Shown piece after piece: positions 2,792-44,049 of a stretch of 64,000 bases of DNA. The stretch lies in IMG/VR virus record IMGVR_UViG_3300022921_000002, positions 1-64,000 of that record. One strand, 5' to 3'. The notes beneath the pieces are model-generated. The model had not been told where the DNA came from. It worked only from the letters and a program-made list of their open reading frames with translations, and ran no database searches. A program made the position numbers and the translations under genes. Each line of letters begins with the position of its first letter. Position 1 is the first letter of the stretch.

Positions 2792-2813
2792 TATTTTTCT
2801 CCGCTTTTTCTTA

Positions 2814-2821
2814 TATTTATT
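2814..2821 (-). promoter_or_regulatory. T4-type late promoter variant (AATAAATA)
   Basis: Minus strand reads AATAAATA about 23 nt upstream of the 110-aa gene, in an intergenic gap. Confidence 0.5.
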
Positions 2822-2825
2822 AATA

Positions 2826-3416
2826 TTAATATAGTAAAATTTCTACGTCAGTAGCACCATCGCTTATAATTTTTACTGCGTTAGATTCTTTTGGTATCAA
2901 ATAACCATTAAAGTCGTTATCTATAAATTTCAAAGAATTATCACCAGTTGTACTAAATAAATGCGTGGATAAGTTTGTTCCTTTGCCCTCAACACTAAAA
3001 TCAAACCCTGTAAGACCATCACCAAGAGAAAATACGAATATGTTTGTATCAAGGGTAAAGGGAAGTGTAATATCACCAACACCGGCAACAACAGTTTCAG
3101 CAAAACCATTTGCGCTAAACTCAATTCTATTAATCCATTCTGAGCTTAAAAAGCTTTGGATACCAAACTCTAAAAATGAGTTTCCGGTAAATCCAAATGA
3201 TAAGTCAGCTGAAGCCTGAATAATAGGGGGAGTAATTGCCGCTGAAAATACGAAATCCAACGGTAGTGTTTGCATGTCACCGGTAATTGGAACAAATACA
3301 TCTGAGTTAAGTGTGTAATCTATCGTTTGCGCAGGCACGCCACCTGTCACAATAGAAAATCCACCTGCAAAAAAGGTGTAATCTAAGCTTGATGTAAATA
3401 CTCCGTTTGCGGACAT
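2826..3416 (-). CDS. Hypothetical protein, probably virion-associated and beta-rich
   Basis: 196-aa ORF co-oriented with its neighbours, with an AGGA RBS; no family recognised. Confidence 0.6.
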   Translation of the reverse strand: MSANGVFTSSLDYTFFAGGFSIVTGGVPAQTIDYTLNSDVFVPITGDMQTLPLDFVFSAAITPPIIQASADLSFGFTGNSFLEFGIQSFLSSEWINRIEFSANGFAETVVAGVGDITLPFTLDTNIFVFSLGDGLTGFDFSVEGKGTNLSTHLFSTTGDNSLKFIDNDFNGYLIPKESNAVKIISDGATDVEILLY

Positions 3417-3428
3417 TTAACTAGTCCT

Positions 3429-3836
3429 TTATGCACCGCCGGCAGTAATTGTAAACGCTGTAATTGTGATTTGCTGACCGACTGCAATATTAGTATTATC
3501 TAATTGCATGTCTCCGCCTGCACCAGTAGCTGTAATAGTACCTTGCATATGGCATGTTGTTCCGCCGTTGTCATGCAATCTAAAATATCCAGCAGTTCCT
3601 GAAGCATCAGCTGATAAGTCTTGCCACGTGCCAGATAGAACAATTGATCCCAAAGCAGGAGTGTCAAGCCAATTAGCAGGTAATACCATAGTTGCTAAAA
3701 CCGTACCTGTATTTGCTGAACCGCAATCCGCTGGAACTGTGCCCGAGGAAACTGTCATAATTGGATTAGTGCCGATTGTAGTTTCTAGTGCTTGAAGCGT
3801 AGCATTCCTAGTGTCTACTGATAACTGAAAAGCCAT
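3429..3836 (-). CDS. Conserved-type phage hypothetical structural protein
   Basis: 135 aa rich in Gly/Thr/Ala (MAFQLSVDTRNATLQAL...GTAGYFRL...FTITAGGA), downstream of a TATAAATA box and an AAGGA RBS. Confidence 0.65.
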   Translation of the reverse strand: MAFQLSVDTRNATLQALETTIGTNPIMTVSSGTVPADCGSANTGTVLATMVLPANWLDTPALGSIVLSGTWQDLSADASGTAGYFRLHDNGGTTCHMQGTITATGAGGDMQLDNTNIAVGQQITITAFTITAGGA

Positions 3837-3873
3837 CCTTTTCTCCCTTTTATTGAGTAAATTATTTCATATA

Positions 3874-3881
3874 TATTTATA
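3874..3881 (-). promoter_or_regulatory. T4-type late promoter TATAAATA
   Basis: Exact TATAAATA on the minus strand in the 118-bp gap upstream of the 135-aa gene and the neck genes. Confidence 0.75.
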
Positions 3882-3899
3882 AAAATTGCAATATAACCG

Positions 3900-3927
3900 T
3901 TGACAATAAAAGAGAGTATGTTATAAT
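3900..3927 (+). promoter_or_regulatory. Consensus sigma70 promoter with extended -10, antisense to the late genes
   Basis: TTGACA (3900-3905), 16-bp spacer ending in TGT, then TATAAT (3922-3927). No credible plus-strand gene downstream. Confidence 0.6.
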
Positions 3928-3954
3928 AGTCTTATCTACTATAAAATAATATGT

Positions 3955-4728
3955 TTATCTTCTTTCAATATCTTCTTCAGACAACAAATCACCCATCCAA
4001 ACCTCAATTACTTTAACAGGTCTGTCTCCAACGTTTGTTGCTTTATGCCATGTATTGGTAGGAATGTCGATACTGTCACCGGTTGAGTAAACCTTAGATG
4101 TTTTGTATCCATTTGGAAACTCAAGATTCATTTCAAGTTTACCATCAACAATATGCCAGTGTTCTGAGCGAACAAAATGTCTTTGGTCTGATAGTGATTT
4201 TTTAACATCAATAGACAACTCCTTAACTTTCCAATGACCATTGTTATCAAGGTTACGATATTTACCCCATAGTCTTTGTGTTTCAGGCTTATCCCAGTTT
4301 TCAAGTAACCAAGATGAACTGTTCTTTTTATCATTACCACCAACACCAAACACAAAACCAATATCGCATTCGTCTTTGAGTTGACGTGCATATTCTACTT
4401 CAGGTGTTGTACCTTTTTGACGATCCCCACCATTAGCAAATATGATTTTAGAGTTTCTAGGAAATGTATCTTTGATATGTCTAATAGCTTCACAGGCATG
4501 ATTTTCGCTATCGTCAAATTCAAATACACCGCCGACACATTTAATTTCTTTAACAATAGCAGAGCGTTCAGACATAGGCATAAACGGTCTACCTTTTTTA
4601 CGAGTTAACCATTCATCAGAATTTAAACCAACCATAAGAATATCACCGAGTTCTTTGGCGGCTTTAAAATATTCAATATGTCCTGAATGGAGTGGATCAA
4701 ATCCACCAGTTACTACAACTACTTTCAT
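3955..4728 (-). CDS. Cytidylyltransferase-family (RfaE/HldE-like) nucleotidyltransferase fused to a mannose-6-phosphate-isomerase type II cupin
   Basis: VVVTGGFDPLHSGHIEY (HxGH motif), GLNSD, ANGGDR and GGNDKKNSSS; then WGKYRNL...KVKELSI...LSDQRHFVRSEHWHIVDG...IPTNTWHKATN cupin motifs. Confidence 0.88.
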   Translation of the reverse strand: MKVVVVTGGFDPLHSGHIEYFKAAKELGDILMVGLNSDEWLTRKKGRPFMPMSERSAIVKEIKCVGGVFEFDDSENHACEAIRHIKDTFPRNSKIIFANGGDRQKGTTPEVEYARQLKDECDIGFVFGVGGNDKKNSSSWLLENWDKPETQRLWGKYRNLDNNGHWKVKELSIDVKKSLSDQRHFVRSEHWHIVDGKLEMNLEFPNGYKTSKVYSTGDSIDIPTNTWHKATNVGDRPVKVIEVWMGDLLSEEDIERR

Positions 4729-4729
4729 A

Positions 4730-5950
4730 TCAATTACCTTTCATAAAATAATCCCACGCAAAACTAACTTTTGATTTATCAGAAATCATATTTCTTTTAT
4801 TATTATAAATTGACGGATGTACCCACCAATCTTCATGAGCGTTAATAGGATCAACACTAAGGTCTTGTACCATCAGTTTATATCCTATCTTATGAAGTAT
4901 ATCCCGTGAGTTATCTTTAAAATCGTTTTGCCACCAGCAATAATTGTGTTGGAATTGGATAATCCCAAATTCATATTTGTTAAATGGTATTTTTGTTAAT
5001 ACATCAAGAGATGTTTGTTCAGAATTAATGCGTAAAAAATCAATGTATTGTTCCATACAAGATTGATTAAACAACAAGTCAAAATTAATTTGGGAGGCAT
5101 CACTAAGGATAATCTGACTTGTTCTTTCTCTTGAATGTATATAACACATTCTTTCATCGTTGTCAATACTAATACCTTTCCACCCAAATTCTTTTTCAAG
5201 CAATGCGGTATTATTACATTCAGTTGGATGCCCAGAACCTATTTCAATAAACGATCCACCTTTTTTACCATCTGTTACTGATAATACAAATAAGTCTTGC
5301 ATATGCCGGGCATAGTTTTGTTTAATATTTTCAAATCCAGGAAACGGAAACTTGTACAGGTCTTTATCTTCATCGGTGTATGGTATACGATGTGGATATC
5401 CTATTTTATTAATCCATTCGCAAACATCCTGAAACGATTCTTTGTCCAAACTTTCTCTATGCTTTGCTTTGAATAATAATAGTTTTGAACTATCAACACC
5501 ATCAGATTTCCAACGAGCAATTGCGTATTGTGCCGCAAATGCCGACATACCTGGAAACCCTATATTAAGATCACCTTCCGCAGTTGTATTTTTGCCAATA
5601 CTACTCCATACAAGTGCATCTCTATAATTGTCTTGAGTTATTGATAATTGTGCAAGAAAGTAATATGCTTCAGGTCTTTCAGGCATAACCTGAATTGCGT
5701 TTTTAAGTAATCCCCAAACGGTTTGAGATCTCCTACCTGCTTCATCATAAACCGCAGCACCACGTATCAAACTTTTATATTGTATGATACGTTCTTCTTC
5801 TGTAACACCGGGTGAATAATCCGCGGCTCTTAAATAGAATGTAAAGGCGGCAGCTAATTGGCCAAGTTTAAAATATTCTTCTGCAAGTGCAAATGATTTC
5901 CAAGGATTATCATAGTCAAGAACGACTTCATTTAGTAAATTATTAATCAT
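4730..5950 (-). CDS. TPR-repeat protein fused to an FkbM-like SAM-dependent methyltransferase domain
   Basis: N-terminal helical TPR-like repeats (FALAEEYFKLGQLAAAFTFYLRAA; AIQVMPERPEAYYFLAQL). C-terminal QDLFVL...GGSFIEIGSGHP..NNTALLEKEFGWKGISID...IDFLRIN..EDWWVHP is FkbM-like. Confidence 0.72.
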   Translation of the reverse strand: MINNLLNEVVLDYDNPWKSFALAEEYFKLGQLAAAFTFYLRAADYSPGVTEEERIIQYKSLIRGAAVYDEAGRRSQTVWGLLKNAIQVMPERPEAYYFLAQLSITQDNYRDALVWSSIGKNTTAEGDLNIGFPGMSAFAAQYAIARWKSDGVDSSKLLLFKAKHRESLDKESFQDVCEWINKIGYPHRIPYTDEDKDLYKFPFPGFENIKQNYARHMQDLFVLSVTDGKKGGSFIEIGSGHPTECNNTALLEKEFGWKGISIDNDERMCYIHSRERTSQIILSDASQINFDLLFNQSCMEQYIDFLRINSEQTSLDVLTKIPFNKYEFGIIQFQHNYCWWQNDFKDNSRDILHKIGYKLMVQDLSVDPINAHEDWWVHPSIYNNKRNMISDKSKVSFAWDYFMKGN

Positions 5951-5952
5951 AG

Positions 5953-6993
5953 TTATACCTTAGTTAAAAAATCAAAGAATACGCCTTTTGGCATTTTCAA
6001 AATATATGATGCGTTATCACTTAAACCAAATGAGATTAAGATATCTGTTTCGGTAAATGTAACACCGGTTACAAACTCAATATTAAATTCCTGACTTTTT
6101 GCATGGTCATAATAAGTACCCATAAAATGAAATTCTTTTGATGTATGTATAATGTTCCAATCATTATCCCAAACAACTACACGGTGTGCATAATTACCAT
6201 CTTTTCTAAAGAAAGAGTCTTTGAGCAAATTTGTTTCATGGCAAAATGCCATTTGCTTATTATCATCAATACGAATAACCTGAGAACCGCCGCGCAAATC
6301 TTTTTGTAAATTAGCACGTTGGTCTTCACTTAACTGAACGGCATCCTCACAAGTACCTTCTTCAATGTTAAATTTAACAACCTGAGTTGGGTTTGACCAT
6401 TTAACAAAATGCCAAGGCATATCTAAAATAGGCATCCAATTCTTTTCACAATATGATTTATCACCATTTGGTGCAGGAATTGGGTGACGACTAATTTCTT
6501 TCCATTCAGTACCATCGTGTTCAACGTGGCACATTTCCATACGTCCTGTACCTTTATCATCATAGCAATCACGGCGAACACCGCAAAGGTACATTTTATC
6601 ATCCCATTTAAATAAACGTGCATCCTCAAGGCCGACAAAGTTCCATGTTGGTTTAGTATCTAAAACCATATTTACTCGACCTGCCGACAGCAGTTTGAAA
6701 TCTTTATCGTATTCGCATAGAATGTTATGTGTTCCTAGTTTAACATCATCTTCAGGATGTATATAAACTAATGGTCCCCACTGATGTGGAAACTTTTTAC
6801 CTTCACTGTGATATAGGATATAATTGATATGGCGAACATTAACAAACATCCTATCACCATCTAAAAAGATGCTAGGATTCATTAGGCCGGTATCTTCGCC
6901 GCCTAGTACTTCTCTTGGAATAATAATAGGATGTATTTCACCGCCACGTTTAAGAGCGTATGTAGCCAGCCCACCTATATGCAAATCGTGCAT
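5953..6993 (-). CDS. Five-bladed beta-propeller glycosidase/phosphorylase-like protein (GH130/GH43-like)
   Basis: NPSI, GLEDARLF, EKNWMP, LRGGSQ, HRVVVWD, IEFVTG and ISFGLSD motifs; GGAGG RBS. Confidence 0.7.
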   Translation of the reverse strand: MHDLHIGGLATYALKRGGEIHPIIIPREVLGGEDTGLMNPSIFLDGDRMFVNVRHINYILYHSEGKKFPHQWGPLVYIHPEDDVKLGTHNILCEYDKDFKLLSAGRVNMVLDTKPTWNFVGLEDARLFKWDDKMYLCGVRRDCYDDKGTGRMEMCHVEHDGTEWKEISRHPIPAPNGDKSYCEKNWMPILDMPWHFVKWSNPTQVVKFNIEEGTCEDAVQLSEDQRANLQKDLRGGSQVIRIDDNKQMAFCHETNLLKDSFFRKDGNYAHRVVVWDNDWNIIHTSKEFHFMGTYYDHAKSQEFNIEFVTGVTFTETDILISFGLSDNASYILKMPKGVFFDFLTKV

Positions 6994-7788: not shown

Positions 7789-7796
7789 TATTTATT
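7789..7796 (-). promoter_or_regulatory. T4-type late promoter variant (AATAAATA)
   Basis: AATAAATA overlapping the stop codon of the 3119-aa gene, 30 nt upstream of the 128-aa gene. Confidence 0.5.
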
Positions 7797-10700
7797 CTTT
7801 ATTGCTCATGAGCATTGTAACCATTTCTGTCAATTTGTCAATGGCTTTTTTCTGCTCATCTATTTGCTTTTGTTGTTTATTTATTGTTTCCTGCTGCTCT
7901 TTTGTTGACTCAATAAGTAGTCCAACCATGTTGCCATAGTTAACTGCTTTACGTTTACCACCGCCAGCATCATTTGGATCGAGTGTGTCAATCTCATAAA
8001 CAATACCTGGTAAAACTTTTTCAACTTGTTGAGCGATAACGCCGGTATGTCGGCCATCACGGTCGATATATTTATAAGTGATACCATCAAGTGACATTAC
8101 CTTTTCAACAGCATTATCAATAACTTCAACATCTTCTTTATAGCGGATATCCGAGAAATCAACATATGCTGTAATATTCTCATCACACTGAATAGCACCA
8201 TAAGAATTTATCCCATTCATCAGTGACGTGCCGGCGGGATTAGTGTAATATGTGGTGTCATTTTGGTCATAGAAAATTGGAGCACGGAAAGAAGATCGAG
8301 CTTCAAAGTAATTAGATCTCGTACGACCTTCCCAGGTACCATTGTAGTAAATATATGTAATATAGTCTTGGTCAGCATAAATAATTGCTTCACCATTGTC
8401 ATGGTACATCGAGAAAATAGAACCGTCATCATCCCAATAATGCCGTCCACACGCAGTACCGTTCGAGTCGCGGTAATAAATTTCACCATGGTCGTTGTTG
8501 TTTGAACGGATTGAGCAAGTATCTGAATCATCATCGTACCAATCCCAACCATCATTCAAAGAATAAATGTTGGCGTTAATGCCATTCATACGTGAAGTTG
8601 AGGCGGGGTTTGTGTAATAGCCTGTGTCATTTTGGTCATAGAAAAGTGGTGCCCGGAATGACCCGCGTGCTTCAAAATAGCTAGATCTTGTACGACCTTC
8701 CCAAGTACCGTTATAATAAATGTAGGTGATATAATCTTCATCAGCATAAATAATTGCTTCACCGTTATCGTGGTACATTGAGAAAATTGACCCATCATCA
8801 TCCCAATAGTGTCTACCACAGGCTGTGCCATTACTATCACGGTAATAAATTTCACCGTGGTCGTTGTTATTTGAACGAATATTGAAAGTATCACCGTCAT
8901 CATCGTATAAATCCCAACCATCATTGAACTGAAGGAAGTTAAGATTAATTTGGTTCATACGAGAAGTTGATGCAAAGTCTCCGTAATAAGCACTGTCGTT
9001 TGAGTCGTAATAACGGCCTGCATACATTGATCCGCCGTTTGTACTGTTTTCATCAAGTACAGGAATTGTTCTCCAAGATCTAAACGAACTACCCCAAGTT
9101 GAGCGGAACCGAAGGTTTGTAATCGGACCACCAACCATTTGCCAACCATAACGGTTGCTACCGTTTGAGTAGTGATATGACTGAATACCAACCCAGTGAG
9201 AAGTACCTGAAGGCTGGTTGCCTGGGTTTGACCACGAGTCAATAAATCCTGAACCCCAGTCAGCAACAGTGGAGGTCATATCTTGACGACCCCAACCCAT
9301 GGCGCCTGTCCAATAGTCGCTGTTACTTGTAATACGAATACGAGCACGATAGTATTCACCACTATCACGAGTATGCCCAGGCATTGATAGGTAAGACATT
9401 GTTTGGTTGTTCACACCACGGAAACGAGTAGAGTTGGTTGAACCGCCGTTAAACATACCAAAGGTATCATTTGAGTCATACCATAATTGACCGCGTGCCG
9501 ATGAACCTTCAAACAGACCGTAGTCAGCACCAACAATTCTAAATCTCCAACTTGCACCGTTATTAAGGAAACCAACGTTGTTACCATTGTCGGCATACAC
9601 ATAGCCACGAACGGTACCAGCATACTCATCTCTAAACCTAATACCGTTTGCGCCGGTGCCACCAGCAATGTTCCAATAATCATCGTTATCAGAATACCAA
9701 TGTTGCCCTGATCCTTGGTTATATAGACCTTCACCAGAGTTATCGTTGCGGAACCAGTTTCTTGCATAGAATTCGTTACCACGAACACCGGTGTTAAAGT
9801 TAGAGAATGACGATGGATCACAATAGTAACCAGTATTATTTGAGTCATAAAAGATTGGTGCTCGGAGTGAGCTTGATGCTTGTGTTACACCATCATTTCT
9901 TGCTTGGAATACCCAAGTGTTTGTAATATTACCTGAACCGGCACCATGTTGTCCAAGATATATACCAGATCCGTTATCGTTATTGTTATTTGAGTCGGCA
10001 TTAAAATAAAAGTTGTTATATGAGTTAAATCTCAAATCATCAGAAATACCACCACCGTTATTACGTGAGGAAATACTATGATAATCAGAATCATTACCGT
10101 AGAATGTGATAAAGTCACCGCGGTCACGCATATCGAGCCTATCAGCACGAACTGTAACCATTTCAGATGTTGAATTTGGATTTACATAGTAACCTGTGTT
10201 GTTACTATCATAAAAGATTGGTGCTCTTAAAGATGAGCCAGCTTGCAAGTTATTATTAACATAGACGTTATTTGCACCTAAAGGATCAGAACCGTTGTTA
10301 ACTGACATAACCTGAGTAGCCATGTTATAATCATTATAAAAACGCATACCTTGGTAGCTAGCGTTTGCACCAAACTTAATACCTGTATGGAATGCAATGC
10401 GCATATCTGGGTATGGGTATGACCAACCACCAGATTCTCGGTAAATAGCGTAAGCAGTAGATCTTCCTGAATCCCAGTATAAACCAAAGCCATCGTTAGA
10501 AGAAACAGCGCCATCATTTGTAAAGTAATTGGCTCGGACGTTATTAAATCGAGAAGTACTTGCCGGATCTGCGTAATAGGACGTGTTATTTCGGTCATAC
10601 ATAATCGGTGTATCAATTCTTGAATTGAACAACGTCTGACCATCGCCACGCATAATAACATTCCATTGGCCACCTACACCGCCATCACGGAATGAGATAT

Positions 10701-13700
10701 CCTCACCACCTGATGTTGCAATAATTAAGTGAGCATCATTAGTATCAGTAGATTGAATATACCCACGAGTGTTTCCTGCTGATGTTTGGAAATGAGCAAT
10801 ACCACCACTAACATGGTATGTGGTATTAACATTAATTTGGTTCATACGTGAAGTCGATGCAAAGTTACCATAATAACCTGTATTATCTAGGTCATAGAAT
10901 ATCGGTGCACGGAACGAACCGTTTTGTGATACATATCCGTCTGAGTTATAAAGACGGTGACCGTATGTTAGTTTCCAATGTTTTGTTGGATAAGAGTCAT
11001 TACCACCTAATGCAACATACATCCCGGTATCATTATCACCCCAACCACTTGCTCTTTTATAAAGACCCACGTTCATATGAGTTCTATAACCTGAGTTATA
11101 TAAAGCAGTTGTATGTATAAGTGGCAAGAACGTGTTTGTTGTTCCTACATTTGTATCACGGTTTCTTGTTGAAATAGGAGCATTTGTTAAGCTTGTAACA
11201 GCAGTTGCGTCATAATCCAACACATTATCAATATACATAATACCATTGAATGTCGCCGTACTTGCAGTACTTAGTGAACCATTCAGCGTTAAGCTATTAA
11301 ATACTGATGTACTCGCCATATTTGCGTAGTAGCCTGTATTATCTTGGTCATAGAAAATTGGTGCTCGATAAGAACCGCGAGCTTGCATATAACCGCTTGC
11401 TGATACTTCTTCCCACTGTCCATTATAATACAATTCAGTACGGCCGTTGTCAAACCATCTTGTCATCCATTCGTTGCGCGTATCGTTATAGATACCTGCT
11501 TCTGCTGAGCCGTTTGACATAAAGACCCAGTCATTACGAATTGCATAACCAGCCCAAGAACTTGTTTTATCACCTTCAACTCTAATTGAACCGTAGTCAC
11601 CTGATGGTGAGTCAATTATGTATTCCGAACCATCAAGCTGAATTTGATTAACACGAATAACATTCATACGTGAGGTTGATGCAAAGTCACCATAGTAATC
11701 TGTGTTGTTTGAGTCATAAAAAATTGGTGAACGCATTTGAGCAGGAGCGATAGCATAACCTGATCTTGTTTCTAATTGTACTACGTTATGCGCATATATT
11801 TTAACCTTATTGGTGTTACCATTTGATCCATCGTTCTGTGCAACAATTATATTATGAGAACCACCTGAACCACCGCGGAGATGAAGTCCACGATAAACAT
11901 TCCAATACATTCCATCAAAGCCAGTATTAGCTGCGCCGCGAGCGCCAGGTCCGCCATAATAATGGTTCCAAAGAACGTGGTTAGTATCAGTACCGCCGTT
12001 AAACCATATACTGTTATGAGTATAAGCACGATTTAATCTTAAACCGTAATTTCTTATTTCTACATTATGTAAAACTGATTGGCTATTAGGATCAACAAAA
12101 TAGTTGCCATCGTTTGCATCAACAAATCTTTGAGCATGGGAATAACGACCAGTGAATGTGTCACCATCAGACTCAATACGGAAACGTGATGTTCCTGCAC
12201 CTGATCCTGTTGTGAAGTGGAGATTACCACCGGAGTTGGTTGTCAAATTATTTGGAGATTCATAAATCTTCCAATCATTACCGCCTTTCCAACGAATACC
12301 TTCTTGAGGACCTGGGTCATTGAATGAAAGATTGTTTAGATTTTCAATTGAACCGTTTGTCCAATCCCAAGAACCTGCAACCTTACCGCCCGAAGCAGGG
12401 TTCATAAAGTAAGCAGTATTATCTCTATCTCTAAAGTTACTAGCATCAACTATATTCATTTTAGATGTGCTTGACGGATCAACGTAATAAGAATTATTAT
12501 CAGAGTCAATCATACTTGCAGCATAAATGCTATCAGGTGTACGAATACGGTTTTGAATATTTGAGCGTTTTAGAATTGGTGGACCGTACTCACGAAGAGC
12601 ACCACCTGTGCTATGATTCATTAATAGACGGATACGAATGTATTTACAACCTGCGCCGTCAGAACCATTATAAACTGTATGGCTTGTTGGAATTGTTGTA
12701 TATCCACGGTATGTTTGCCACGAAGTAGATGTTTGGTTTGAGTTACTTGCAACAAAGTACGTGGTGCCTGCATTAGAAGAAATTGGCTTTTTATCTTTAT
12801 CGTATCTTTCAATACCATAATAAACAACACCGCCTGAACCAGATATTGTTCTTACTGAAACCTCACCGTAAATTTCTTCGCCAGGTTCAACAGGAATATA
12901 ATCAGAATAGAAATCACGGTATCCCGACGTTCTTAGTGCGTAAGTTGCAGAGAATGGGCCGTTACCGTTTTTAACGTATTCACTTGTTACAGTGGTAGGT
13001 CCATTTTCAGCACCTTGTAATGCTTTGATTGCGCGCTTTTCCCAATACTCAGTTCCGTCAAATACCATGGTTTCGGCAAAGCCTGGTCCATAAACTGGGT
13101 TCAATGATATATTTTCATTGCCTGCGTTTAGATTATAGTTTGAGGCAGCCATTTCACCATCAATGAGCATATCGCCGTCTTCATTGATACGTGCTTTATC
13201 GCCAATGCCGTTGAAGTGAATAATAAAGGCATCTCTATCACCTGATCCTGAATTATAATTATCGTGGACAATCCATGGGTAATTACCATTGTTTGTAAAC
13301 GAGAGATTGCTGTTACGGAAACCTGCAAGATATCTGTTATTATGCCAAATTCCTAATGGATATGATCCACCAATATAGTCACCGCCATTGCCGAGTGCCA
13401 ATTGGTTCATACGAGATTTTGCATTAAAGTCACCACGATAGGCAGTATCGTTACTATCATAATAAATTGGTGAACGCATTTGAACCGGTGCTAAAGCATA
13501 ACCGACTTCTGCTGAAATTTGGTGAACACCATTTCCATACAAACGAGTCCAACTGTTTCTATCAGCATATAATACCCACTCATTATCAGTATCGTTATAA
13601 AGACCCATATTGGACAAGCTGTCTGACATAAATACCCAGTCATTTTCAATGGCATAACCTGCGTAACCGCCTTTACCACCTTGTACCATAATAGTACCGT

Positions 13701-17191: not shown

Positions 17192-19610
17192 CGTCAATCA
17201 GTGTTGCCACTATTTTGTATGTTGTACTATTACTACTTGCTGGTGTTCCAACAATTTTAACGTCACCGCTACTTAAACTTACATCATATTCTGCAAGTTC
17301 AGAACTTGTTGTAATGGTAGCAAACTCTGTTGCGTGTGCGGTTGTTCCGTTATGTGTTACCAATATTTTTGTCGTATGTCTTTCAGCACCATCTTTTGCG
17401 GTAATAACAATTTCAGCACTGCCGTAAGTTGAGGCATCAAATGTATAGATATCCTGCGGGAAAATGGTTGATGTTGTAACTTCGGTAGAAACAGATCTTG
17501 ACTCATCTTGAATAATATCATCATTGACAGTCAAGGAGCCAGACATCGTATCGCCGGTTACATTAACGTATCTTAAATCACCTTGTGCTTCTGTGATAAA
17601 ATTTCTTGTTTCTTTTGTTGCTGTCTGTACGTGACCATGGGTGTCAAACGTAATACCTGTTAAGAATTCAAGTGTACCAAATGTCTCATCGGCAACAGAA
17701 GAAGTATCGCCGTGGTCAATTGTAACATTGGCGGTTAAGGCACCACCACCCGTCAGTGCAGTACCTGCAATTACTTGTACTGTATTATCAACCTTATCGT
17801 CTAATAAATTATCTACTTCTGTTTCTGTATAATAACGGCCATCTAAATCAGTAGATGTTGTTGTTTGAACGTGACCATATGTGTCAAATGTAACACCAGT
17901 AAGTACGTTACCATCTGCTAATGAAACATCAACCACGCTAGATGTATCGGAGTGGTCCAAAGTTATAATAATATCGGTAGAATCATTTAAATTAAATGTG
18001 CCTGATCCGTCGATTGCGTTACCACCATTTACTTGAACTTCACCATTACCAATTTGACCTGCCGCAGAGTTAGCAGCTTGTGCTAAAATATCAGATGCGT
18101 GTAGACCATCAAGCCTATCGGCATCAAGGTTTGATCCTGTTCCATCGTTTGACGTATCATAAAATCCAAGAGCACGAATATCAGCAGCGGTTTGGTCGGC
18201 AGTTGCACCGTCCTCAATTAAATCAAGTTTAGCACCGTCAACCGAAACGTCACGGCCATCAACAGTACCTGTAATAATTATATTTCCATTAACTGTGATT
18301 TCATCAAACTCGTCAACGGTAACATAATAACTACTGCCATCACCAGTTTCTAACACCAATGTGCTATTAGCGGAAACCCAACTAAAGTCATCAACACCAG
18401 CAACGGCGGTTGTTGAAGCAGCAGTAATACGACCATCTTCATCAACGGTTATAACAGGAATAGCGGATGCAGTACCATATTGCCCAGGAGTTACACCAGT
18501 ATTTGCTAATTCAGTTACAAAAGAAATAGTACCAGAATTGTTTGTACCTGTACCTTCAATATCACCTGTGAGTGTAACTGTTAATCCATCAAGCTCTGCA
18601 CCGTCTGCTGAAACATCCCGGCCATCAACAGTACCGTTACCTACCATTGTGATTTCATCAAACTCACTAATTTCTGTTGAATAAACAGAACCGTCGGATG
18701 TAGCAATATTAAATGTTGAGTTAGCGCTTGTCCAAGATGTTGCCGAAACACCAGCAACAGCAGCAGTTGTAGCGGCAGTAATACGACCGTCTTCGTCAAC
18801 TGTAATGACAGGCACCAATGAAGATGAACCGTAAGATCCTGAAGTTACACCGGTGTTTGCTAATTCGGTTACAATGTCAAGGATTGATGTATTAGATGTG
18901 GCAGTACCTTCAATATCACCAGTTAAGTTAACAGTAATATCAGTTTCTAATGTATCTAATCTTGCACCGTCTGCAGCTATGTCGCGGCCGTCTACAAGAC
19001 CTGTAACAGCAATGTCGCCGTTAACTGTAATGCCTGTAAACTCATTTATAACCGCGTCATAGTTGGTTCCATCGGATGTAGCAATCCTTAGAGTGTTGTT
19101 TGCAACGGTCCATGTGAAGTCATCAACACCACCAACAGAAGTTTCAGATGCCGCTGTAATTCTTCCGTCTTCATCAACTGTAATAACTGGTATTTGTGAG
19201 GATGAACCATATTGTGCAGGGGTAACACCGGTATTTGCCAACTCGGTGATGAGTTCCATAACACCTGTATTTGAAAAGGCAGTACCTGTTACTTTACCTG
19301 ATAATGTTAAATCAAAGGTGGCAGGTGGTACGTTTGTAAAATTATTATAATCAAGATAATACGTACCTTCTTGACCATCAAGGAGATCAGCATCTAAACC
19401 TGATGTTGCACCGTCAACGGTTTTAATAAGTGTAAGTAAATCTGCGGCGTGTGGTGATAGTTCTTCTATAAAGCTAACACTTGAATTACCCGACTTAAAG
19501 TAAACTTTACCGTCCGCGGTGTTAATAGCGATTTCGCCGAATTCTAATTGTGCTGTATTCGGTACTCGACCGGGAATACTACTCCTGCGGAGCTTAATTG
19601 TTGTTGACAT
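17187..19610 (-). CDS. Tail fibre protein with an Mtd-N/hyaluronidase-like N-terminus and three internal repeats
   Basis: MSTTIKLRRSS...LEFGEIAINTADGKVYFK N-terminus; three copies of ELANTGVTxGxYGxSxxIPVITVDEDGRITAA; two LDADxLDG motifs. Confidence 0.75.
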   Translation of the reverse strand: MSTTIKLRRSSIPGRVPNTAQLEFGEIAINTADGKVYFKSGNSSVSFIEELSPHAADLLTLIKTVDGATSGLDADLLDGQEGTYYLDYNNFTNVPPATFDLTLSGKVTGTAFSNTGVMELITELANTGVTPAQYGSSSQIPVITVDEDGRITAASETSVGGVDDFTWTVANNTLRIATSDGTNYDAVINEFTGITVNGDIAVTGLVDGRDIAADGARLDTLETDITVNLTGDIEGTATSNTSILDIVTELANTGVTSGSYGSSSLVPVITVDEDGRITAATTAAVAGVSATSWTSANSTFNIATSDGSVYSTEISEFDEITMVGNGTVDGRDVSADGAELDGLTVTLTGDIEGTGTNNSGTISFVTELANTGVTPGQYGTASAIPVITVDEDGRITAASTTAVAGVDDFSWVSANSTLVLETGDGSSYYVTVDEFDEITVNGNIIITGTVDGRDVSVDGAKLDLIEDGATADQTAADIRALGFYDTSNDGTGSNLDADRLDGLHASDILAQAANSAAGQIGNGEVQVNGGNAIDGSGTFNLNDSTDIIITLDHSDTSSVVDVSLADGNVLTGVTFDTYGHVQTTTSTDLDGRYYTETEVDNLLDDKVDNTVQVIAGTALTGGGALTANVTIDHGDTSSVADETFGTLEFLTGITFDTHGHVQTATKETRNFITEAQGDLRYVNVTGDTMSGSLTVNDDIIQDESRSVSTEVTTSTIFPQDIYTFDASTYGSAEIVITAKDGAERHTTKILVTHNGTTAHATEFATITTSSELAEYDVSLSSGDVKIVGTPASSNSTTYKIVATLIDV

Positions 19611-19632
19611 ATCTATGCCTCTTTGTTATAAT
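19604..19632 (+). promoter_or_regulatory. Consensus sigma70 promoter with extended -10, antisense to the late genes
   Basis: TTGACA (19604-19609), 17-bp spacer ending in TGT, then TATAAT (19627-19632). Followed immediately by the palindrome AGGTATATACCT (19633-19644). Confidence 0.55.
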
Positions 19633-19672
19633 AGGTATATACCTTAAATGATAATCTATATGGTTTGTCTAA

Positions 19673-22600
19673 TTAAAATGATCCACCGTCAATCTCATTA
19701 ACAGCAATTGAAACAGTTCCCGAAGTGACAGTTGTATCTACACCATCAACACCATTGAACTGTAATGTTTCACCTAAAGTGATTGCTGTATTAGCATCGG
19801 TTTCATCAGAAACAGTAAATGTCGGGTTTGCCATTTTAGCATTAGTAACACCGCCATCTTTTAATTGTAACGTATCAGCAACAATCTCAATTCCGGTGTC
19901 ATCAACATTAACTGAGAAATCTGTTCCTGTTAATGTTAAACCTTCACCACCTGAATATGTGCCAGCACCAGAGAACTGATACCAGATCACATCACCAACA
20001 CCTAGAACAAATCCTTCAGCATCGGCAACTGTTGCTACATAACCTGTATTTTTATTTTGAGTACCATCAGTTACGAATTGAAATGCACCAGGAATTTCTG
20101 ATGTTTCATTAAAGTATTCACCACGAGTAAGTACCCATGCTGTTGTACCATCGCCGACAGTTGTTACTTCGTATGAACCGTTTTCAATTTCATCAGTCTG
20201 ATCTTTAACAAGTACTCTATCACCAACTGACCACTCTGTTACACCATCCAATTCAAATGCAGCAAGTGTACCGTTGTTTGTGAGTGTCCCATCAGTGTTA
20301 TTATATGTTGCACCTAAATCAGCAGTTGTTGCAGCAAGCGCCGACGGAATAACTCTTAAACCTTGAGCAACACTATCAACATAAACCTTTGTAGCTGCAT
20401 CCTGGTCATTTGTAGGATCAAGTAGGTTTAGTAATCTGTTGTTACTAAAATCAATTGTATTTGTTGATGAGTCAATTGAGTTATTATCAAATGTAAGATC
20501 GGCAACATCTAATTGAGTTTCAATATTAACTTGTTTTAAATTTGAATCTGTGCCACCTGGGTGTAAGAAATATGATGTGGATTCAGTATCAACAAATCTT
20601 TCGGCAATTACATCACCGCTTTCCACATAGAAATCTGATGTATCTTTACGGCCATAGAACACATAGTTAAATGCATTATTGAGCTGACCGATTTTTGTAC
20701 CATCAGAATAAAGTGTTGCGGTTCCTGTAGAACCTTCCATTTTAATTTGAGCAGCGTTTTGTAAATAACCAACACGGATTGAGTTTAATTGAGATTCAGA
20801 TGCAAAATCACCATAGAACCTAACATCAGAACTATCACGGAACCGAGGTGCATCAAGGTTACCGGTCATTGTATCACCAGTTACGTTGATATATCTTGCA
20901 TCAATTGTACCGACATTAAGTGCAACATTTTGGGCATATCCTGGTGCAGGTGTGCCTGTTGTTGTGATACCAAATCCTGCCGTAACAGAACCGACATAAT
21001 TAGCGGTAATCTCAACATTCATTTTATCGGTTGGGTCATCATATACAATAGAAACTCCGTCTTCGGTATTGTTTCTAAACATTTCACCAATAAGATCGTG
21101 TACCGTTTCTGTAAAGTCAGGAATAGCGTTTGCTTGAAGCTCAACGGGAATTTCTGTAGCAAATGTAACTTGACCTTGTTCGTTAAGAACAACACGAGCA
21201 GTAAAACCATCGTTACCATATGAACCTGGTGTAACACCTGTATCCTGAATACCGATACTAATTGCATTATTACCAGCATCTTCATCAAAGGCAATAAGAC
21301 CATTACCAAGTGTAAGTGTTGGGTTTTGAATGAGGTTAACTGAGTTAAATGTGTTTGCTTCATCAATAACTGTTAACTGTGAAGTAAATGCACTGGCAAG
21401 ATAACCTAATGGCACAGCATCAGTATTTGCTACAGGTGTACCAACGTTTGTAATAACATGGCCGCTTACATCAATTTGATCTGAAGCTGTATTTGCGCCA
21501 AGTACAAGATCACCGTTTGCGGATATAATACTATTTTCATCTAAAATAACATCATCAACCACCATTTTTCCATTGACAGAAAATAATCCTGTGTTATAAT
21601 CAATTATAACTTTTGATAATCCACTACCAAATTTAAATGATCCATCAGAATCAATCTGCATGGCAATCTGATTATTTGCAAAGAAATCTAATTGGTTATT
21701 ATCAGCACCTGGTGAAGACTCGGCACGTATAAAGGTATTTTGGTCAACATCAATAACACCACCAAGGCCTGTCCATGCTGTGCCATTGTATGCTTCAAAT
21801 CTAGCATCCTGTGTGTTATAACGGATCATACCTTGTTCGGCTGTAGGTCTTTCCGACACATTCCCAACTGGAATTATGAAACCACCTGTAGAATTAACTT
21901 TTACAACATCAGCGGTAAGTTTAATAAAGTCAGCAGCATTTCTTATTTCAGCAACATATGCCGCTAACCAATCTTTAGTTGCAGATCCCAATGTATAAGT
22001 ATCAGTTACATCAGGGATTAAGTTACTTTCAAAATCAGCACTAACTGTAATTGCGTCTGTATCGGCATCACCGATTTGAATATTACCACCAATAGTTACA
22101 TTACCTGTTACACCAAGGTTACCGCTGATTTGCGTATCACCTGTTAAGTAATCAATTGTAAACTTATTTAATCCATCACCAAATTTAAACAAACCAACTT
22201 CAGATAGTTGTAATCTTTCGGTACCTGCTGTAAAGAATTGTATTTGGTCATTATCGGCACCGCTTGATGATTCGGCAACAATTTTTGTATCTCGGTCAAG
22301 GTCAATAACTGAACCTGCAATTGAACTCCATGAACCTGTATTATCAAATCCTTCAAACCTTTGGTCATCTGTATTATAACGGATCATCCCAGTTTGAGGT
22401 GAAGGTCTTTCGAGTGTTGTACCTTTCGGGAATTGAATTGCGCCAGTCAGATTAAACTCTGCAACTTCACTATGACCTAATTGAATATTATCGTTAATGG
22501 TAATAGAGCTATTTGCTTCAATACTACCATTCGTATTAATAATAAGTTGCTGTGTTCCACCAACAAAGAATTTTAATTCATCGTTGTCGGCATTCGGTGT

Positions 22601-24400: not shown

Positions 24401-24408
24401 TATTTATA
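24401..24408 (-). promoter_or_regulatory. T4-type late promoter TATAAATA
   Basis: Exact TATAAATA in an intergenic gap, just downstream of a terminator and 31 nt upstream of the 108-aa gene. Confidence 0.78.
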
Positions 24409-24426
24409 ATATTCTCATCCATATTT

Positions 24427-24455
24427 AAAAAAAGGGAGCACAAAGCCCCCTCTTT
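24427..24455 (-). terminator. Rho-independent terminator after the collagen-like gene
   Basis: Minus strand reads GGGGGC-TTTGT-GCTCCC-TTTTTTT: a 6-bp stem with one G:U pair, followed by a 7-T run. Confidence 0.8.
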
Positions 24456-24477
24456 AACTTGTGCTATGGGAATATCA

Positions 24478-40675: not shown

Positions 40676-40700
40676 ACGGCTATCCTGCTTCTTTTTATTT

Positions 40701-40708
40701 TATTTATA
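40701..40708 (-). promoter_or_regulatory. T4-type late promoter TATAAATA, with a second AATAAATA box at 40725-40732
   Basis: Exact TATAAATA 26 nt upstream of the 3666-aa start; a tandem variant box lies further upstream in the same gap. Confidence 0.75.
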
Positions 40709-43869: not shown

Positions 43870-44049
43870 TTAATTCTTCTCTATTAAATCTAATCGTTCG
43901 CAGATACGTGTGATACAAATTTTTATATCAGAGATCTCTTCAGCTAACGCAGTAACATTGCGGTGTAATGCTCTTTCCTGTTTATATTTATTAAGAGCAG
44001 CGGCGTCATTATTTAGAACGGCATTACTATTTTTATCGCGAGTATACAT
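43870..44049 (-). CDS. Small hypothetical protein (59 aa), translationally coupled to the VrlC-like gene
   Basis: Below the ORF-track cutoff. My translation is MYTRDKNSNAVLNNDAAALNKYKQERALHRNVTALAEEISDIKICITRICERLDLIEKN*. It starts in a TAATG overlap, fills the gap exactly and has a coiled-coil-like C-terminus. Confidence 0.7.
   Translation of the reverse strand: MYTRDKNSNAVLNNDAAALNKYKQERALHRNVTALAEEISDIKICITRICERLDLIEKN

What the first reader, a model, noticed from the sequence alone, without database searches (positions are those of the whole stretch)
3900..3945. Consensus host-type sigma70 promoter aimed antisense into the late operon (site 1)
TTGACA-N16-TATAAT with an extended TG lies on the plus strand in an intergenic gap, back-to-back with a minus-strand late TATAAATA box 19 bp away. 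No plausible plus-strand gene follows; the transcript would be antisense to the nucleotidyltransferase/methyltransferase/GH cluster. A short inverted repeat (ATAGT-N7-ACTAT, 3926-3942) covers the predicted start site. Inference: an early antisense RNA or a promoter switch that silences late or glycan genes until the late sigma factor takes over.
Basis: partly seen in the sequence, partly recalled or inferred. Interest (0 to 1): 0.62.

Follow-up and report, generated by a model that had tools for sequence, protein, structure and literature searches.

The report
Conserved antisense host-type promoter in late genes
A perfect host-type promoter that points backwards into the late genes of an uncultured marine T4-like phage is real and kept intact in nearly all relatives, so the phage very probably makes early antisense RNA against some of its own late genes.

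Summary
TTGACA (3900-3905), a 16-nt spacer and TGtTATAAT (3919-3927) lie on the + strand in the 118-bp gap between two minus-strand genes, 19 bp from a minus-strand TATAAATA late box.

It is not chance. The window has three perfect sites, all on the + strand, against 0.22 expected. A perfect antisense site is kept at this position in 76 of 80 related contigs, and 33 different spacers occur among them. In about 1 Mb of relatives' late-gene DNA, perfect sites are 149 antisense and 4 same-strand.

The same cassette is a perfect promoter followed by a short hairpin centred on the predicted start. In the same 221-kb genome it also sits just after uvsW, firing back into it, and 79 of 80 relatives keep it there. 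It occurs three times in the cultured Sinorhizobium phage phiN3.

No conserved + strand gene or known RNA family follows the promoter.

Best reading: a selected, very strong sigma70-type promoter that makes early antisense transcripts into late genes. In build it resembles the PeSL promoter/stem-loop cassettes of T4-type phages, but it is turned antisense. No strand-specific RNA data were available, so transcription, timing and effect remain inferred. I class it as a new variant of known kinds.

The parts
3900..3905 (+). -35 hexamer TTGACA of the antisense promoter (site 1)
   Evidence: Perfect in 37 of 40 distinct related gaps.
3919..3927 (+). Extended -10, TGtTATAAT. The spacer 3906-3921 is 16 nt.
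   Evidence: TG is kept in 27 of 37 related modules, and 33 distinct spacers occur.
3928..3935 (+). Discriminator AG..TT and predicted start A3934, 7 nt after the -10
   Evidence: Inference from spacing rules. The 7th nt after the -10 is A in 34 of 37 relatives and the 2nd nt is G in 29 of 37. Not mapped experimentally.
3921..3944 (.).
   Evidence: A stem of 4 bp or more right after the -10 occurs in 89-93% of intergenic modules against 21% of shuffles, with about 48 different stem/loop combinations. The acting strand is unresolved.
3874..3881 (-). T4-type late promoter TATAAATA for the 135-aa virion protein gene, back-to-back with the sigma70 promoter
   Evidence: Conserved as ATATTTATAAAAA in the alignment. 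Genome-wide, 25 of 32 TATAAATA boxes sit 10-90 nt upstream of a same-strand start.
3843..3916 (-). Long-range helix in read-through minus-strand RNA. Arm 3904-3916 (inside the promoter spacer) pairs with arm 3843-3855 (the Shine-Dalgarno region of the 135-aa gene). Transcripts from the late promoter lack the upstream arm.
   Evidence: 13 nt, 92% complementary. (MFE -18.7 against -10.3 for shuffles, z -3.0). Present in the window's own clade and, as pairing of 5 or more Shine-Dalgarno-region nucleotides, in 10 of 37 relatives.
3429..3836 (-). 135-aa virion structural protein gene (phrog_3758), downstream neighbour on the minus strand
3955..4728 (-). 257-aa cytidylyl/adenylyltransferase + cupin (mannose-6-P isomerase C-terminal) gene. 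It is the first gene that the antisense transcript would cover.
   Evidence: The order 346-aa, about 411-aa, about 260-aa, 135-aa is kept in most relatives.
7814..7841 (-). Sense sigma70-like promoter (TTGACA-N16-TACAAT, 11/12) upstream of the DUF7936 pair and the three-gene cluster. It is convergent with site 1.
   Evidence: Kept as a sigma70-like promoter in close relatives and replaced by a TATAAATA late box in distant ones.
10302..10331 (+). Antisense CTGACA-N18-TGTTATAAT (11/12) inside the 3119-aa ORF
   Evidence: Conservation not tested.
19604..19644 (+). Site 2: perfect antisense promoter (TTGACA 19604-19609 overlaps the start codon of the 807-aa gene; TATAAT 19627-19632) followed by the hairpin AGGTATATACCT (19633-19644)
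   Evidence: Perfect in most of the closer relatives, with covarying hairpins. In some relatives the hairpin stays while the -10 has decayed.
21573..21600 (+). Site 3: perfect antisense promoter inside the 1455-aa ORF
   Evidence: Perfect in 16 of 26 distinct homologues. It rides on a protein motif (D/N/Y)Y(N/T)TG...VN. In other relatives a 17-nt-spacer version encodes IITG...PVN, a different frame over the -10.

Best explanation
The site is a functional, strongly selected promoter for the host's primary-sigma (sigma70-type) RNA polymerase. It has a near-ideal build: an A-rich upstream tract, a consensus -35, a 16-17 nt spacer, an extended -10, a consensus -10, a G two bases after the -10 and an A start. 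It belongs to a small set of like promoters that point against late genes in this T4-superfamily lineage. In this window they are at 3900, 19604 and 21573, and probably 10302. Elsewhere in the genome one lies just after uvsW. Before the phage's gp55-type late sigma takes over, host polymerase would start at about A3934 and transcribe the + strand into the 3' end of the 257-aa sugar-nucleotide enzyme gene and beyond. The inferred effect is to hold down or delay expression of these genes, by head-on collision with sense transcription and by pairing with sense RNA. At site 1 a second inferred effect is competition with the late promoter, whose TATAAATA box lies in the upstream contact zone of the sigma70 promoter. 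The small hairpin centred on the start is a second, separately conserved element. It most likely acts in the sense transcript as a gene-end attenuator or 3' stabiliser. In build, the pair matches a PeSL-type promoter/stem-loop cassette turned antisense. Shown: the sequence, its statistical excess, its orientation, its conservation, and the lack of a coding or known-RNA product. Inferred: activity, early timing and the repressive effect.
For: The match is perfect and there is an excess of such sites. Genome-wide there are 10 perfect sites in 221 kb. Five are antisense, and they point into the sugar-nucleotide gene cluster next to virion genes, the 1455-aa ORF of the late block (two sites), uvsW and a gene beside the endolysin. 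Site 1 is perfect in 76 of 80 related contigs, which is 37 of 40 distinct gaps with 33 distinct spacers. Sites 2 and 3 are kept in many relatives. The uvsW cassette is perfect in 79 of 80 relatives, while the neighbouring sense promoter scores only 7-12 of 12 (mostly 8-11). In about 1.0 Mb of relatives' late-gene DNA there are 149 antisense (74 distinct) against 4 same-strand perfect sites, and the reversed-pattern control gives 7. The same cassette occurs three times in cultured phage phiN3, always antisense at a gene's 3' end. The phage's ordinary early promoters are sigma70-type and sense, so host polymerase is used early. A gp55-like sigma and TATAAATA late promoters are present, and no AsiA or MotA was found. 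No conserved + strand ORF follows the promoter, and the 75-aa antisense frame is a by-product of composition. There is no Rfam family in the window. Early antisense RNAs against structural genes are documented in phage PAK_P3 (PMC4933390).
Against: No strand-specific RNA evidence exists. The four metatranscriptomes that hold the phage are kept only as contigs and show no start, strand or level. The antisense promoters cover only some late operons: none of 11/12 or better lies in 24-65 kb. Two sub-lineages have lost the site-1 cassette (L077/L079 by deletion, L053 by decay), so it is dispensable there. Part of the conservation of site 3 comes from a protein motif. Perfect-consensus promoters can be slow to clear, so tight binding rather than RNA output could be the selected property. 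The host is unknown.
Confidence: 0.55

Rival explanations
1. The selected function is that of a PeSL-type composite terminator/promoter cassette. The hairpin, together with tightly bound polymerase, insulates neighbouring transcription units, and the conserved ~30-45-bp cassette serves as a joint for modular recombination. The antisense RNA would be a by-product.
For: PeSLs are strong sigma70-like promoters with an AT-rich upstream tract and a stem-loop that may lie just downstream of the -10. They act as promoters and terminators and mediate shuffling (PMC2839356; PMC4122927). The cassette here always sits right after a stop codon, with a covarying hairpin. In some relatives the hairpin stays after the -10 has decayed. 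One contig (L008/L203) joins uvsW to the promoter half of site 1, with the crossover inside a shared 32-nt hairpin/-10 core. In the window's clade a sense sigma70 promoter at 7841 is convergent with site 1, and an anti-Shine-Dalgarno helix blocks translation of read-through RNA, so read-through into the 135-aa gene does seem to be a problem the phage guards against.
Against: PeSLs precede a Shine-Dalgarno site and start codon in the promoter's own direction and sit among variable early ORFans. These cassettes have no gene in their direction and lie at fixed places in core regions. The hairpins are weak (about -3 to -4 kcal/mol) and lack a U-run. Site 2 lies inside a late operon, so its hairpin cannot be a full terminator. 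In-gene sites have the promoter but mostly no hairpin. The L008 joint could be an assembly chimera at a 32-nt repeat.
Confidence: 0.2
2. The promoters are replication origins of the T4 R-loop type. [quoted passage not shown]
For: T4 oriF and oriG are a promoter plus an AT-rich downstream unwinding element, and oriE depends on an early promoter (PMC3016281). By my count from the sequences read, the first ~50 nt downstream of sites 1-3 are about 72-75% A+T, against 62.5% for the genome.
Against: There are three or four such promoters in the same direction within 18 kb. There are no iterons or direct repeats and no turn in cumulative GC skew. The + strand is G-poor, which, from general knowledge, should disfavour stable R-loops. 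One cassette points into uvsW, the gene for the helicase that removes R-loops. Intergenic DNA is AT-rich anyway.
Confidence: 0.08
3. The strong divergent promoter activates the adjacent promoter (the late box at 3881; the gp55 promoter beside uvsW) through the negative supercoiling left behind the transcribing polymerase.
For: Two of the cassettes are back-to-back with another promoter, at a conserved short distance: late box, 11 nt, then the -35 in most relatives, and paired -35 boxes at uvsW/gp55.
Against: Sites 2 and 3, and at least two of the three phiN3 sites, have no evident divergent partner. At these distances the two polymerases would overlap rather than cooperate.
Confidence: 0.07
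4. The promoter drives an unannotated small + strand gene or small RNA.
For: A 21-codon ATG frame begins at 3951 (read from the sequence) and a 75-aa TTG frame lies at 4381-4608.
Against: The ATG at 3951 is absent in most relatives. The antisense frames differ in place, length and start codon among relatives. The 75-aa frame is the in-register antisense frame and shows no avoidance of TTA/CTA/TCA codons. There is no Rfam match, and the predicted 5' part of the + RNA is unstructured.
Confidence: 0.03
5. Chance match in AT-rich intergenic DNA, or a by-product of coding constraints.
For: Looser sigma70-like matches are no more frequent than in shuffles (43 against 47.4). Site 3 overlaps a conserved peptide motif.
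Against: See: perfect hexamers are kept while spacers diverge, and the strand bias is extreme.
Confidence: 0.01

Closest known systems
PeSL (promoter-early stem-loop) cassettes of T4-type phages RB49/phi1, T4/PST and KVP40/nt-1 (Arbiol et al. 2010, PMC2839356; Comeau et al. 2014, PMC4122927)
   Same: A very strong sigma70-like promoter, an AT-rich tract upstream of the -35, and a short stem-loop overlapping the promoter. One described subclass has the stem-loop just downstream of the -10. They are intergenic and repeated in the genome, and crossovers have been found within the cassette.
   Different: PeSLs face the next gene (a Shine-Dalgarno site and ATG follow) and flank variable early ORFans in hyperplastic regions. 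The cassettes here face backwards into the preceding gene, have no gene in their direction, and sit at fixed positions in core late or recombination regions. Their hexamers are perfect in nearly all relatives.
Early antisense transcripts against late structural genes: Pseudomonas phage PAK_P3 (Chevallereau et al. 2016, PMC4933390) and the classical 'anti-late RNA' of T4 (own knowledge, 1970s hybridisation work; not retrieved here)
   Same: Antisense transcription aimed at late or structural genes and made mainly early, proposed to stop premature late expression.
   Different: Those are RNA observations. In what I read of the PAK_P3 paper, no conserved promoters for these RNAs are described. 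Here the promoters and their conservation are shown but the RNA is not. T4 itself has no perfect TTGACA-N16/17-TATAAT site.
T4 replication origins oriF/oriG/oriE (Kreuzer and Brister 2010, PMC3016281)
   Same: A promoter firing into AT-rich DNA. oriE lies in a late-gene cluster and uses an early-mode promoter.
   Different: No iterons, no skew change, several sites close together, and one site aimed at uvsW.
T4 gene e / soc / 49 / I-TevI translational lock (Uzan and Miller 2010, PMC3014915)
   Same: In the window, read-through RNA pairs the Shine-Dalgarno region of the 135-aa gene with an upstream arm, and the late promoter lies between the arms, so only late transcripts are open.
   Different: This concerns the sense RNA of the neighbouring gene, not the antisense promoter. 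The upstream arm happens to be the promoter's spacer. Seen in only part of the relatives.
CfrI antisense RNA of cyanophage S-PM2 (cited in Clokie et al. 2010, PMC2984593)
   Same: An antisense RNA in a T4-like marine phage that lacks AsiA and MotA.
   Different: CfrI is a ~225-nt RNA linking psbA and a homing endonuclease gene, co-expressed with its targets. It has no relation in place or sequence.

Membership tests
Sigma70-type (-35/-10) promoter | -35 and -10 hexamers close to TTGACA and TATAAT, 17 +/- 1 nt apart | tested here: met
   12 of 12 with a 16-nt spacer.
Sigma70-type (-35/-10) promoter | Auxiliary elements: extended -10 TG, A/T-rich upstream tract, purine start about 7 nt after the -10 | tested here: met
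   TG at 3919-3920, an A-rich tract upstream, and A3934.
Sigma70-type (-35/-10) promoter | Purifying selection on the hexamers but not on the spacer | tested here: met
   37 of 40 distinct gaps are perfect, with 33 distinct spacers.
Sigma70-type (-35/-10) promoter | A mapped transcription start, or in vitro transcription by the holoenzyme | not testable with these tools
   Only unstranded contigs of metatranscriptomes were on hand.
PeSL composite promoter/terminator cassette | Strong sigma70-like promoter with an AT-rich upstream tract and an overlapping stem-loop | tested here: met
PeSL composite promoter/terminator cassette | Followed in its own direction by a Shine-Dalgarno site and the start codon of a gene | tested here: not met
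   The promoter faces the 3' end of the preceding gene, and there is no conserved + strand ORF.
PeSL composite promoter/terminator cassette | Located in hyperplastic regions flanking variable ORFans | tested here: not met
   The position is fixed between conserved genes in most relatives.
PeSL composite promoter/terminator cassette | Acts as a recombination joint | tested here: inconclusive
   One contig has a crossover inside the cassette core. An assembly chimera cannot be excluded.
PeSL composite promoter/terminator cassette | The stem-loop terminates transcription | not testable with these tools
   The stems are weak (-3 to -4 kcal/mol) and have no U-run. This needs a reporter assay.
Early antisense ('anti-late') RNA system | Promoter oriented against late genes | tested here: met
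   All genes of 1-65 kb are on the minus strand, with TATAAATA late promoters. The cassettes are on the + strand.
Early antisense ('anti-late') RNA system | An antisense transcript is present, and present early | not testable with these tools
T4-type R-loop origin | Promoter followed by an AT-rich unwinding element | tested here: inconclusive
   By my count from the sequences read, the downstream 50 nt are about 72-75% A+T, but so is intergenic DNA in general.
T4-type R-loop origin | Iterons (as at oriE) or a change of strand skew at the site | tested here: not met
   There are no direct repeats, and cumulative GC skew runs monotonically.

The most novel reading that the evidence does not exclude
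A lineage-wide regulatory device may exist across distant branches of the T4 superfamily: uncultured marine phages, the Sinorhizobium phiM12/phiN3 group and, in weaker form, cyanophages. It would consist of perfect-consensus host promoters fused to a start-centred hairpin, planted at the 3' ends of selected late genes, including the R-loop helicase gene uvsW. These would act as early antisense silencers or insulators and could also serve as joints for genome rearrangement. That would give the old 'anti-late RNA' a defined and conserved genetic basis.
Probability: 0.4. Interest if true: 0.72.

Novelty: new variant of a known kind. Interest (0 to 1): 0.6.

Why it matters
To my knowledge (literature not searched exhaustively), the promoters behind early antisense transcription against late genes had not been pinned down or shown to be under selection. 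Here comparative data show that such promoters are among the best conserved non-coding elements of a widespread, mostly uncultured marine T4-like lineage. They are better conserved than the promoters of neighbouring early genes.

One of them targets uvsW. In T4, the late timing of uvsW is what ends origin-dependent replication. This makes a concrete idea testable: that antisense promoters set the timing of chosen late genes in phages that lack AsiA and MotA. The test can be done in a cultured phage, phiN3 or its relatives.

The result also extends the PeSL concept from sense cassettes among variable early genes to antisense cassettes at fixed core positions.

Tried and rejected
- **RNA evidence.** The look-up of sequencing runs found salt-marsh and marine metatranscriptomes that hold the phage. 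All are kept as contigs, so read laying (6,000 letters) gave no strand, start or level. It only showed contig breaks at 3919-3948 and a co-occurring strain with another spacer behind its own TTGACA.
- **Close cultured relatives.** Megablast and blastn against phage records found none. The nearest are the Sinorhizobium phiM12/phiN3 group, at 45% identity for the neck protein.
- **Literature.** Searches for 'anti-late' and for Syn9 antisense data gave nothing useful. The T4 genome review (PMC150520) is not held, and one search failed on a short term.
- **T4 as a direct comparator.** T4 has no perfect site, so it cannot be used directly.
- **Which strand the hairpin acts on.** There is no significant G.U asymmetry, and the folds are not more stable than shuffles.
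- **Overlapping + strand gene.** Rejected.
- **Known RNA family.** None.
- **Iterons.** None.
- **tRNAs in the window.** None.
- **Function of the 406-aa and 346-aa proteins.** Not resolved.

Full report
**Setting**

The window is the first 64 kb of a 221,447-bp virus record (37.5% G+C). IMG/VR classes it as linear and CheckV rates it 100% complete. It is a T4-superfamily phage:
- It has gp13/gp14-type neck proteins at 1023-2459.
- Elsewhere in the genome it has uvsY, uvsW, a gp55-like late sigma, gp47 and gp46.
- Of its 32 TATAAATA boxes, 25 lie 10-90 nt upstream of a same-strand start codon.

I found no AsiA or MotA, although the control genomes of that search did not ring either. The nearest cultured phages are the Sinorhizobium phiM12/phiN3 group, at 45% identity for the neck protein. 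No close DNA relative is in the phage collection. The phage occurs in salt-marsh and marine metatranscriptomes. By my own simple ORF call, everything from 1 to 65 kb is on the minus strand. Late promoters in the window are at 3881, 17191, 24408, 40708 and 51185.

**The observation**

- TTGACA (3900-3905), a 16-nt spacer and TATAAT (3922-3927), preceded by TG (3919-3920), lie on the + strand.
- They sit in the 118-bp gap between the start of a 135-aa virion protein gene (3429-3836, minus) and the stop of a 257-aa gene (3955-4728, minus).
- The late box TATAAATA is on the minus strand at 3874-3881, 19 bp from the -35.
It extends to 9 pairs (3921-3929 / 3936-3944).
- Loose sigma70-like matches are no more frequent than chance (43 against 47.4). 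Perfect ones are: 3 in the window, all on the + strand and all with TGTTATAAT, against 0.22 expected.

**Is it selected?**

I fetched 80 IMG/VR contigs that encode relatives of the 135-aa protein (70-100% identity).
- In 76 of them a perfect 12/12 TTGACA-N16/17-TATAAT lies on the antisense strand, 40-66 nt upstream of the gene's ATG.
- After removing duplicates there are 40 different gaps. Of these, 37 have the perfect promoter, with 33 different spacers.
- Most spacer columns are only 35-60% conserved. TG is kept in 27 of 37, G at the second base after the -10 in 29 of 37, and A at the seventh base in 34 of 37.
- Two contigs have lost the whole block by deletion, and in one the -35 has decayed.

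The neighbouring gene order (346-aa, about 411-aa, about 260-aa, 135-aa, all on one strand) is kept in most relatives. The promoter is therefore antisense to the ~260-aa gene nearly everywhere, and no opposite-strand gene follows it.

**The other sites**

*Site 2 (19604-19632).* It lies between the 1455-aa and 807-aa genes, and its -35 overlaps the ATG of the latter. It is perfect in most of the closer relatives. In some relatives the -10 has decayed while the hairpin beside it remains.

*Site 3 (21573-21600).* It lies inside the 1455-aa ORF and is perfect in 16 of 26 distinct homologues. Part of this comes from a conserved peptide, (D/N/Y)Y(N/T)TG...VN. However, the codon before GTC ends in T after seven different amino acids. 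In other relatives a 17-nt-spacer version reads IITG...PVN, a different frame over the same ATTATA.

*Strand bias in relatives.* In the two late-gene sets together (about 1.0 Mb), perfect sites are 149 antisense (74 distinct) against 4 same-strand. The reversed-pattern control gives 7.

**The cassette elsewhere in the genome and in cultured phages**

Genome-wide there are ten perfect sites. The ordinary early promoters form a different family: aaattaacTA-TTGACA-tttggtTTAGAATCAGtTATATT. These are sense, lie about 25 nt before a ribosome site, and have an imperfect -10.

The site at 130485-130512 (minus strand) has exactly the build of site 1 in the relatives: TTGACA-N16-TATAAT-AGCATTTATGCT-CTATAAACAATA. 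It lies about 25 nt after the stop of uvsW and fires back into it. It is back-to-back with the sense promoter of the gp55-like gene. Of 80 related contigs, 79 keep a perfect antisense promoter there, each with its own hairpin. The sense promoter beside it scores 7-12 of 12, mostly 8-11. In this genome uvsW is packed behind uvsY and a small ORF, downstream of a sigma70-like promoter. An antisense promoter at its 3' end could therefore lower early UvsW relative to UvsY. This is inference. In T4, UvsW is late and unwinds origin R-loops (PMC3016281).

In cultured Sinorhizobium phage phiN3 all three perfect sites are antisense cassettes at gene 3' ends: after uvsW-gp51, after a beta-glucanase gene and after gp302. 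In two the -10 is followed directly by the hairpin CAGGAATGTCCTG; in the third (after the beta-glucanase gene) by the related, imperfect CAGGATAACCGCCTG. Three cyanophages have weaker (10-11/12) antisense matches in the gap before gp55. T4 has none, and carries a CUUCGG hairpin after uvsW.

**The hairpin**

- A stem of 4 bp or more begins within two bases of the -10 in 89-93% of intergenic cassettes, against 21% of shuffles. There are about 48 different stem/loop combinations, so the pairing rather than the sequence is kept.
- The fixed bases are those the promoter needs: A and G after the -10, and TTAT with the A at the predicted start.
- The start falls in the loop, so the antisense RNA would lack the left arm.
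- The stems are weak (about -3 to -4 kcal/mol) and not more stable than shuffles. G.U usage does not tell which strand folds.
- In-gene sites mostly lack the hairpin.

I read it as a gene-end stem-loop of the sense transcript that shares bases with the promoter. This is not shown.

**What does not explain the promoter**

- No conserved + strand ORF follows it. The ATG at 3951 is missing in most relatives.
- Antisense frames differ in place, length and start codon among relatives.
- The 75-aa frame at 4381-4608 is the in-register antisense frame. It owes its openness to a stretch poor in Leu and Ser, not to avoidance of TTA/CTA/TCA.
- There is no Rfam family in the window, no direct repeats and no turn in GC skew.

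**Context of site 1**

Two further features fit a tightly guarded boundary.
- First, a sense sigma70-like promoter (7814-7841, 11/12) stands before the DUF7936 pair and the three-gene cluster. It is kept in close relatives and replaced by a TATAAATA box in distant ones. In this clade the cluster is therefore bracketed by convergent sigma70-type promoters.
- Second, in read-through minus-strand RNA the complement of the promoter spacer (3904-3916) pairs with the Shine-Dalgarno region of the 135-aa gene (3843-3855). This gives a 12-bp helix with MFE -18.7 against -10.3 for shuffles. RNA started at the late box lacks the upstream arm. This is the arrangement known for T4 genes e, soc, 49 and I-TevI (PMC3014915). 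It is seen in the window's clade and, with other sequences, in about a quarter of the relatives.

**Comparison with what is known**

- In build the cassette matches the PeSL elements of T4-type phages: a strong sigma70-like promoter, an AT-rich upstream tract and an overlapping stem-loop. It fails two of their defining features, a downstream gene in the same direction and a location among variable early ORFans (PMC2839356, PMC4122927).
- In proposed function it matches the early antisense RNAs against structural genes of PAK_P3 (PMC4933390) and the 'anti-late RNA' of T4 (own knowledge).
- The R-loop origin model remains possible but is disfavoured.
- One contig joins uvsW to the site-1 promoter half, with the crossover inside a shared 32-nt core. 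That would fit PeSL-like shuffling, but it could also be an assembly chimera.

**Limits**

- ORFs come from a simple caller of my own.
- IMG/VR contigs are redundant, so I give distinct counts as well.
- Promoter activity, timing and effect are inferred.
- The host is unknown.
- The public RNA data could not show strand or starts.

**Verdict**

Antisense control of late genes is the most likely role (about 0.55). I class it as a new variant of known kinds.

Noticed in passing
G000 130485-130512 (minus strand), outside the window; locus L160 4485-4512: The same perfect promoter plus hairpin cassette lies about 25 nt after the stop of uvsW and fires back into it. It is back-to-back with the promoter of the gp55-like late sigma gene. 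It is perfect in 79 of 80 related contigs.
   Followed up: yes
window 3843-3855 and 3904-3916: A 13-nt inverted repeat. In read-through minus-strand RNA it would lock the Shine-Dalgarno region of the 135-aa gene in a 12-bp helix (z -3.0), while RNA from the late promoter lacks the upstream arm. This is the T4 gene-e type of translational lock. It is seen in only part of the relatives.
   Followed up: partly
G000 73-205 kb, for example 89312-89340, 90177-90205, 140855-140883, 202423-202451, 203737-203765: A repeated early-promoter cassette, aaattaacTA-TTGACA-tttggtTTAGAATCAGtTATATT. It is always sense, lies about 25 nt before a ribosome site, and often has AGAATCA repeated or inverted around the -10. 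It looks PeSL-like. The conserved TAGAATCAG in the spacer is unexplained.
   Followed up: partly
window 7814-7841 (minus strand): A sense sigma70-like promoter (11/12) inside the last codons of the 3119-aa ORF, before the DUF7936 gene pair. Close relatives keep it, while distant relatives have a TATAAATA late box at that place instead. This is an apparent swap of promoter class.
   Followed up: partly
loci L008/L203 (one IMG/VR contig) compared with L009/L010 and L195: uvsW is joined directly to the site-1 promoter half and the 135-aa gene. The sequences switch partner inside a shared 32-nt hairpin/-10 core. This is either recombination at the cassette or an assembly chimera.
   Followed up: partly
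window 7792-17151, 19673-24040, 24478-29217, 29675-40675, 44049-49508: Five very long minus-strand ORFs (3119, 1455, 1579, 3666 and 1819 aa) in the late block. In relatives the 1455-aa family carries a repeated peptide motif that coincides with antisense promoters.
   Followed up: no
window 40669-40698 (+ strand): TTGACA overlaps the start codon (ATGTCAA) of the 3666-aa gene, as at site 2, but here the -10 is poor (TTTTAT). It lies next to the late box at 40708.
   Followed up: no
window 24409-24470: A G+C-rich hairpin flanked by an A-run and a T-run (aaaaaaagggagc...gccccctcttt), just upstream of the late box at 24408. It looks like a two-way intrinsic terminator, unlike the weak hairpins of the cassettes.
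   Followed up: no
window 2792-4045, in runs X2 and X3: Contigs of a co-occurring strain replace this stretch (the 196-aa gene, the 135-aa gene and the gap) with 1,407 other letters. A second variant joins at 3919 with a different spacer behind its own TTGACA.
   Followed up: no
G000 164891-164918 (minus strand): Another perfect antisense promoter, inside a 378-aa gene of unknown function just upstream of a GH19/peptidoglycan-binding endolysin-like gene.
   Followed up: no
window 4730-5950 and 5953-6993: The 406-aa protein (weak TPR hits only) and the 346-aa protein (no hits) have no Pfam, NCBIfam or PDB sequence match.
   Followed up: partly
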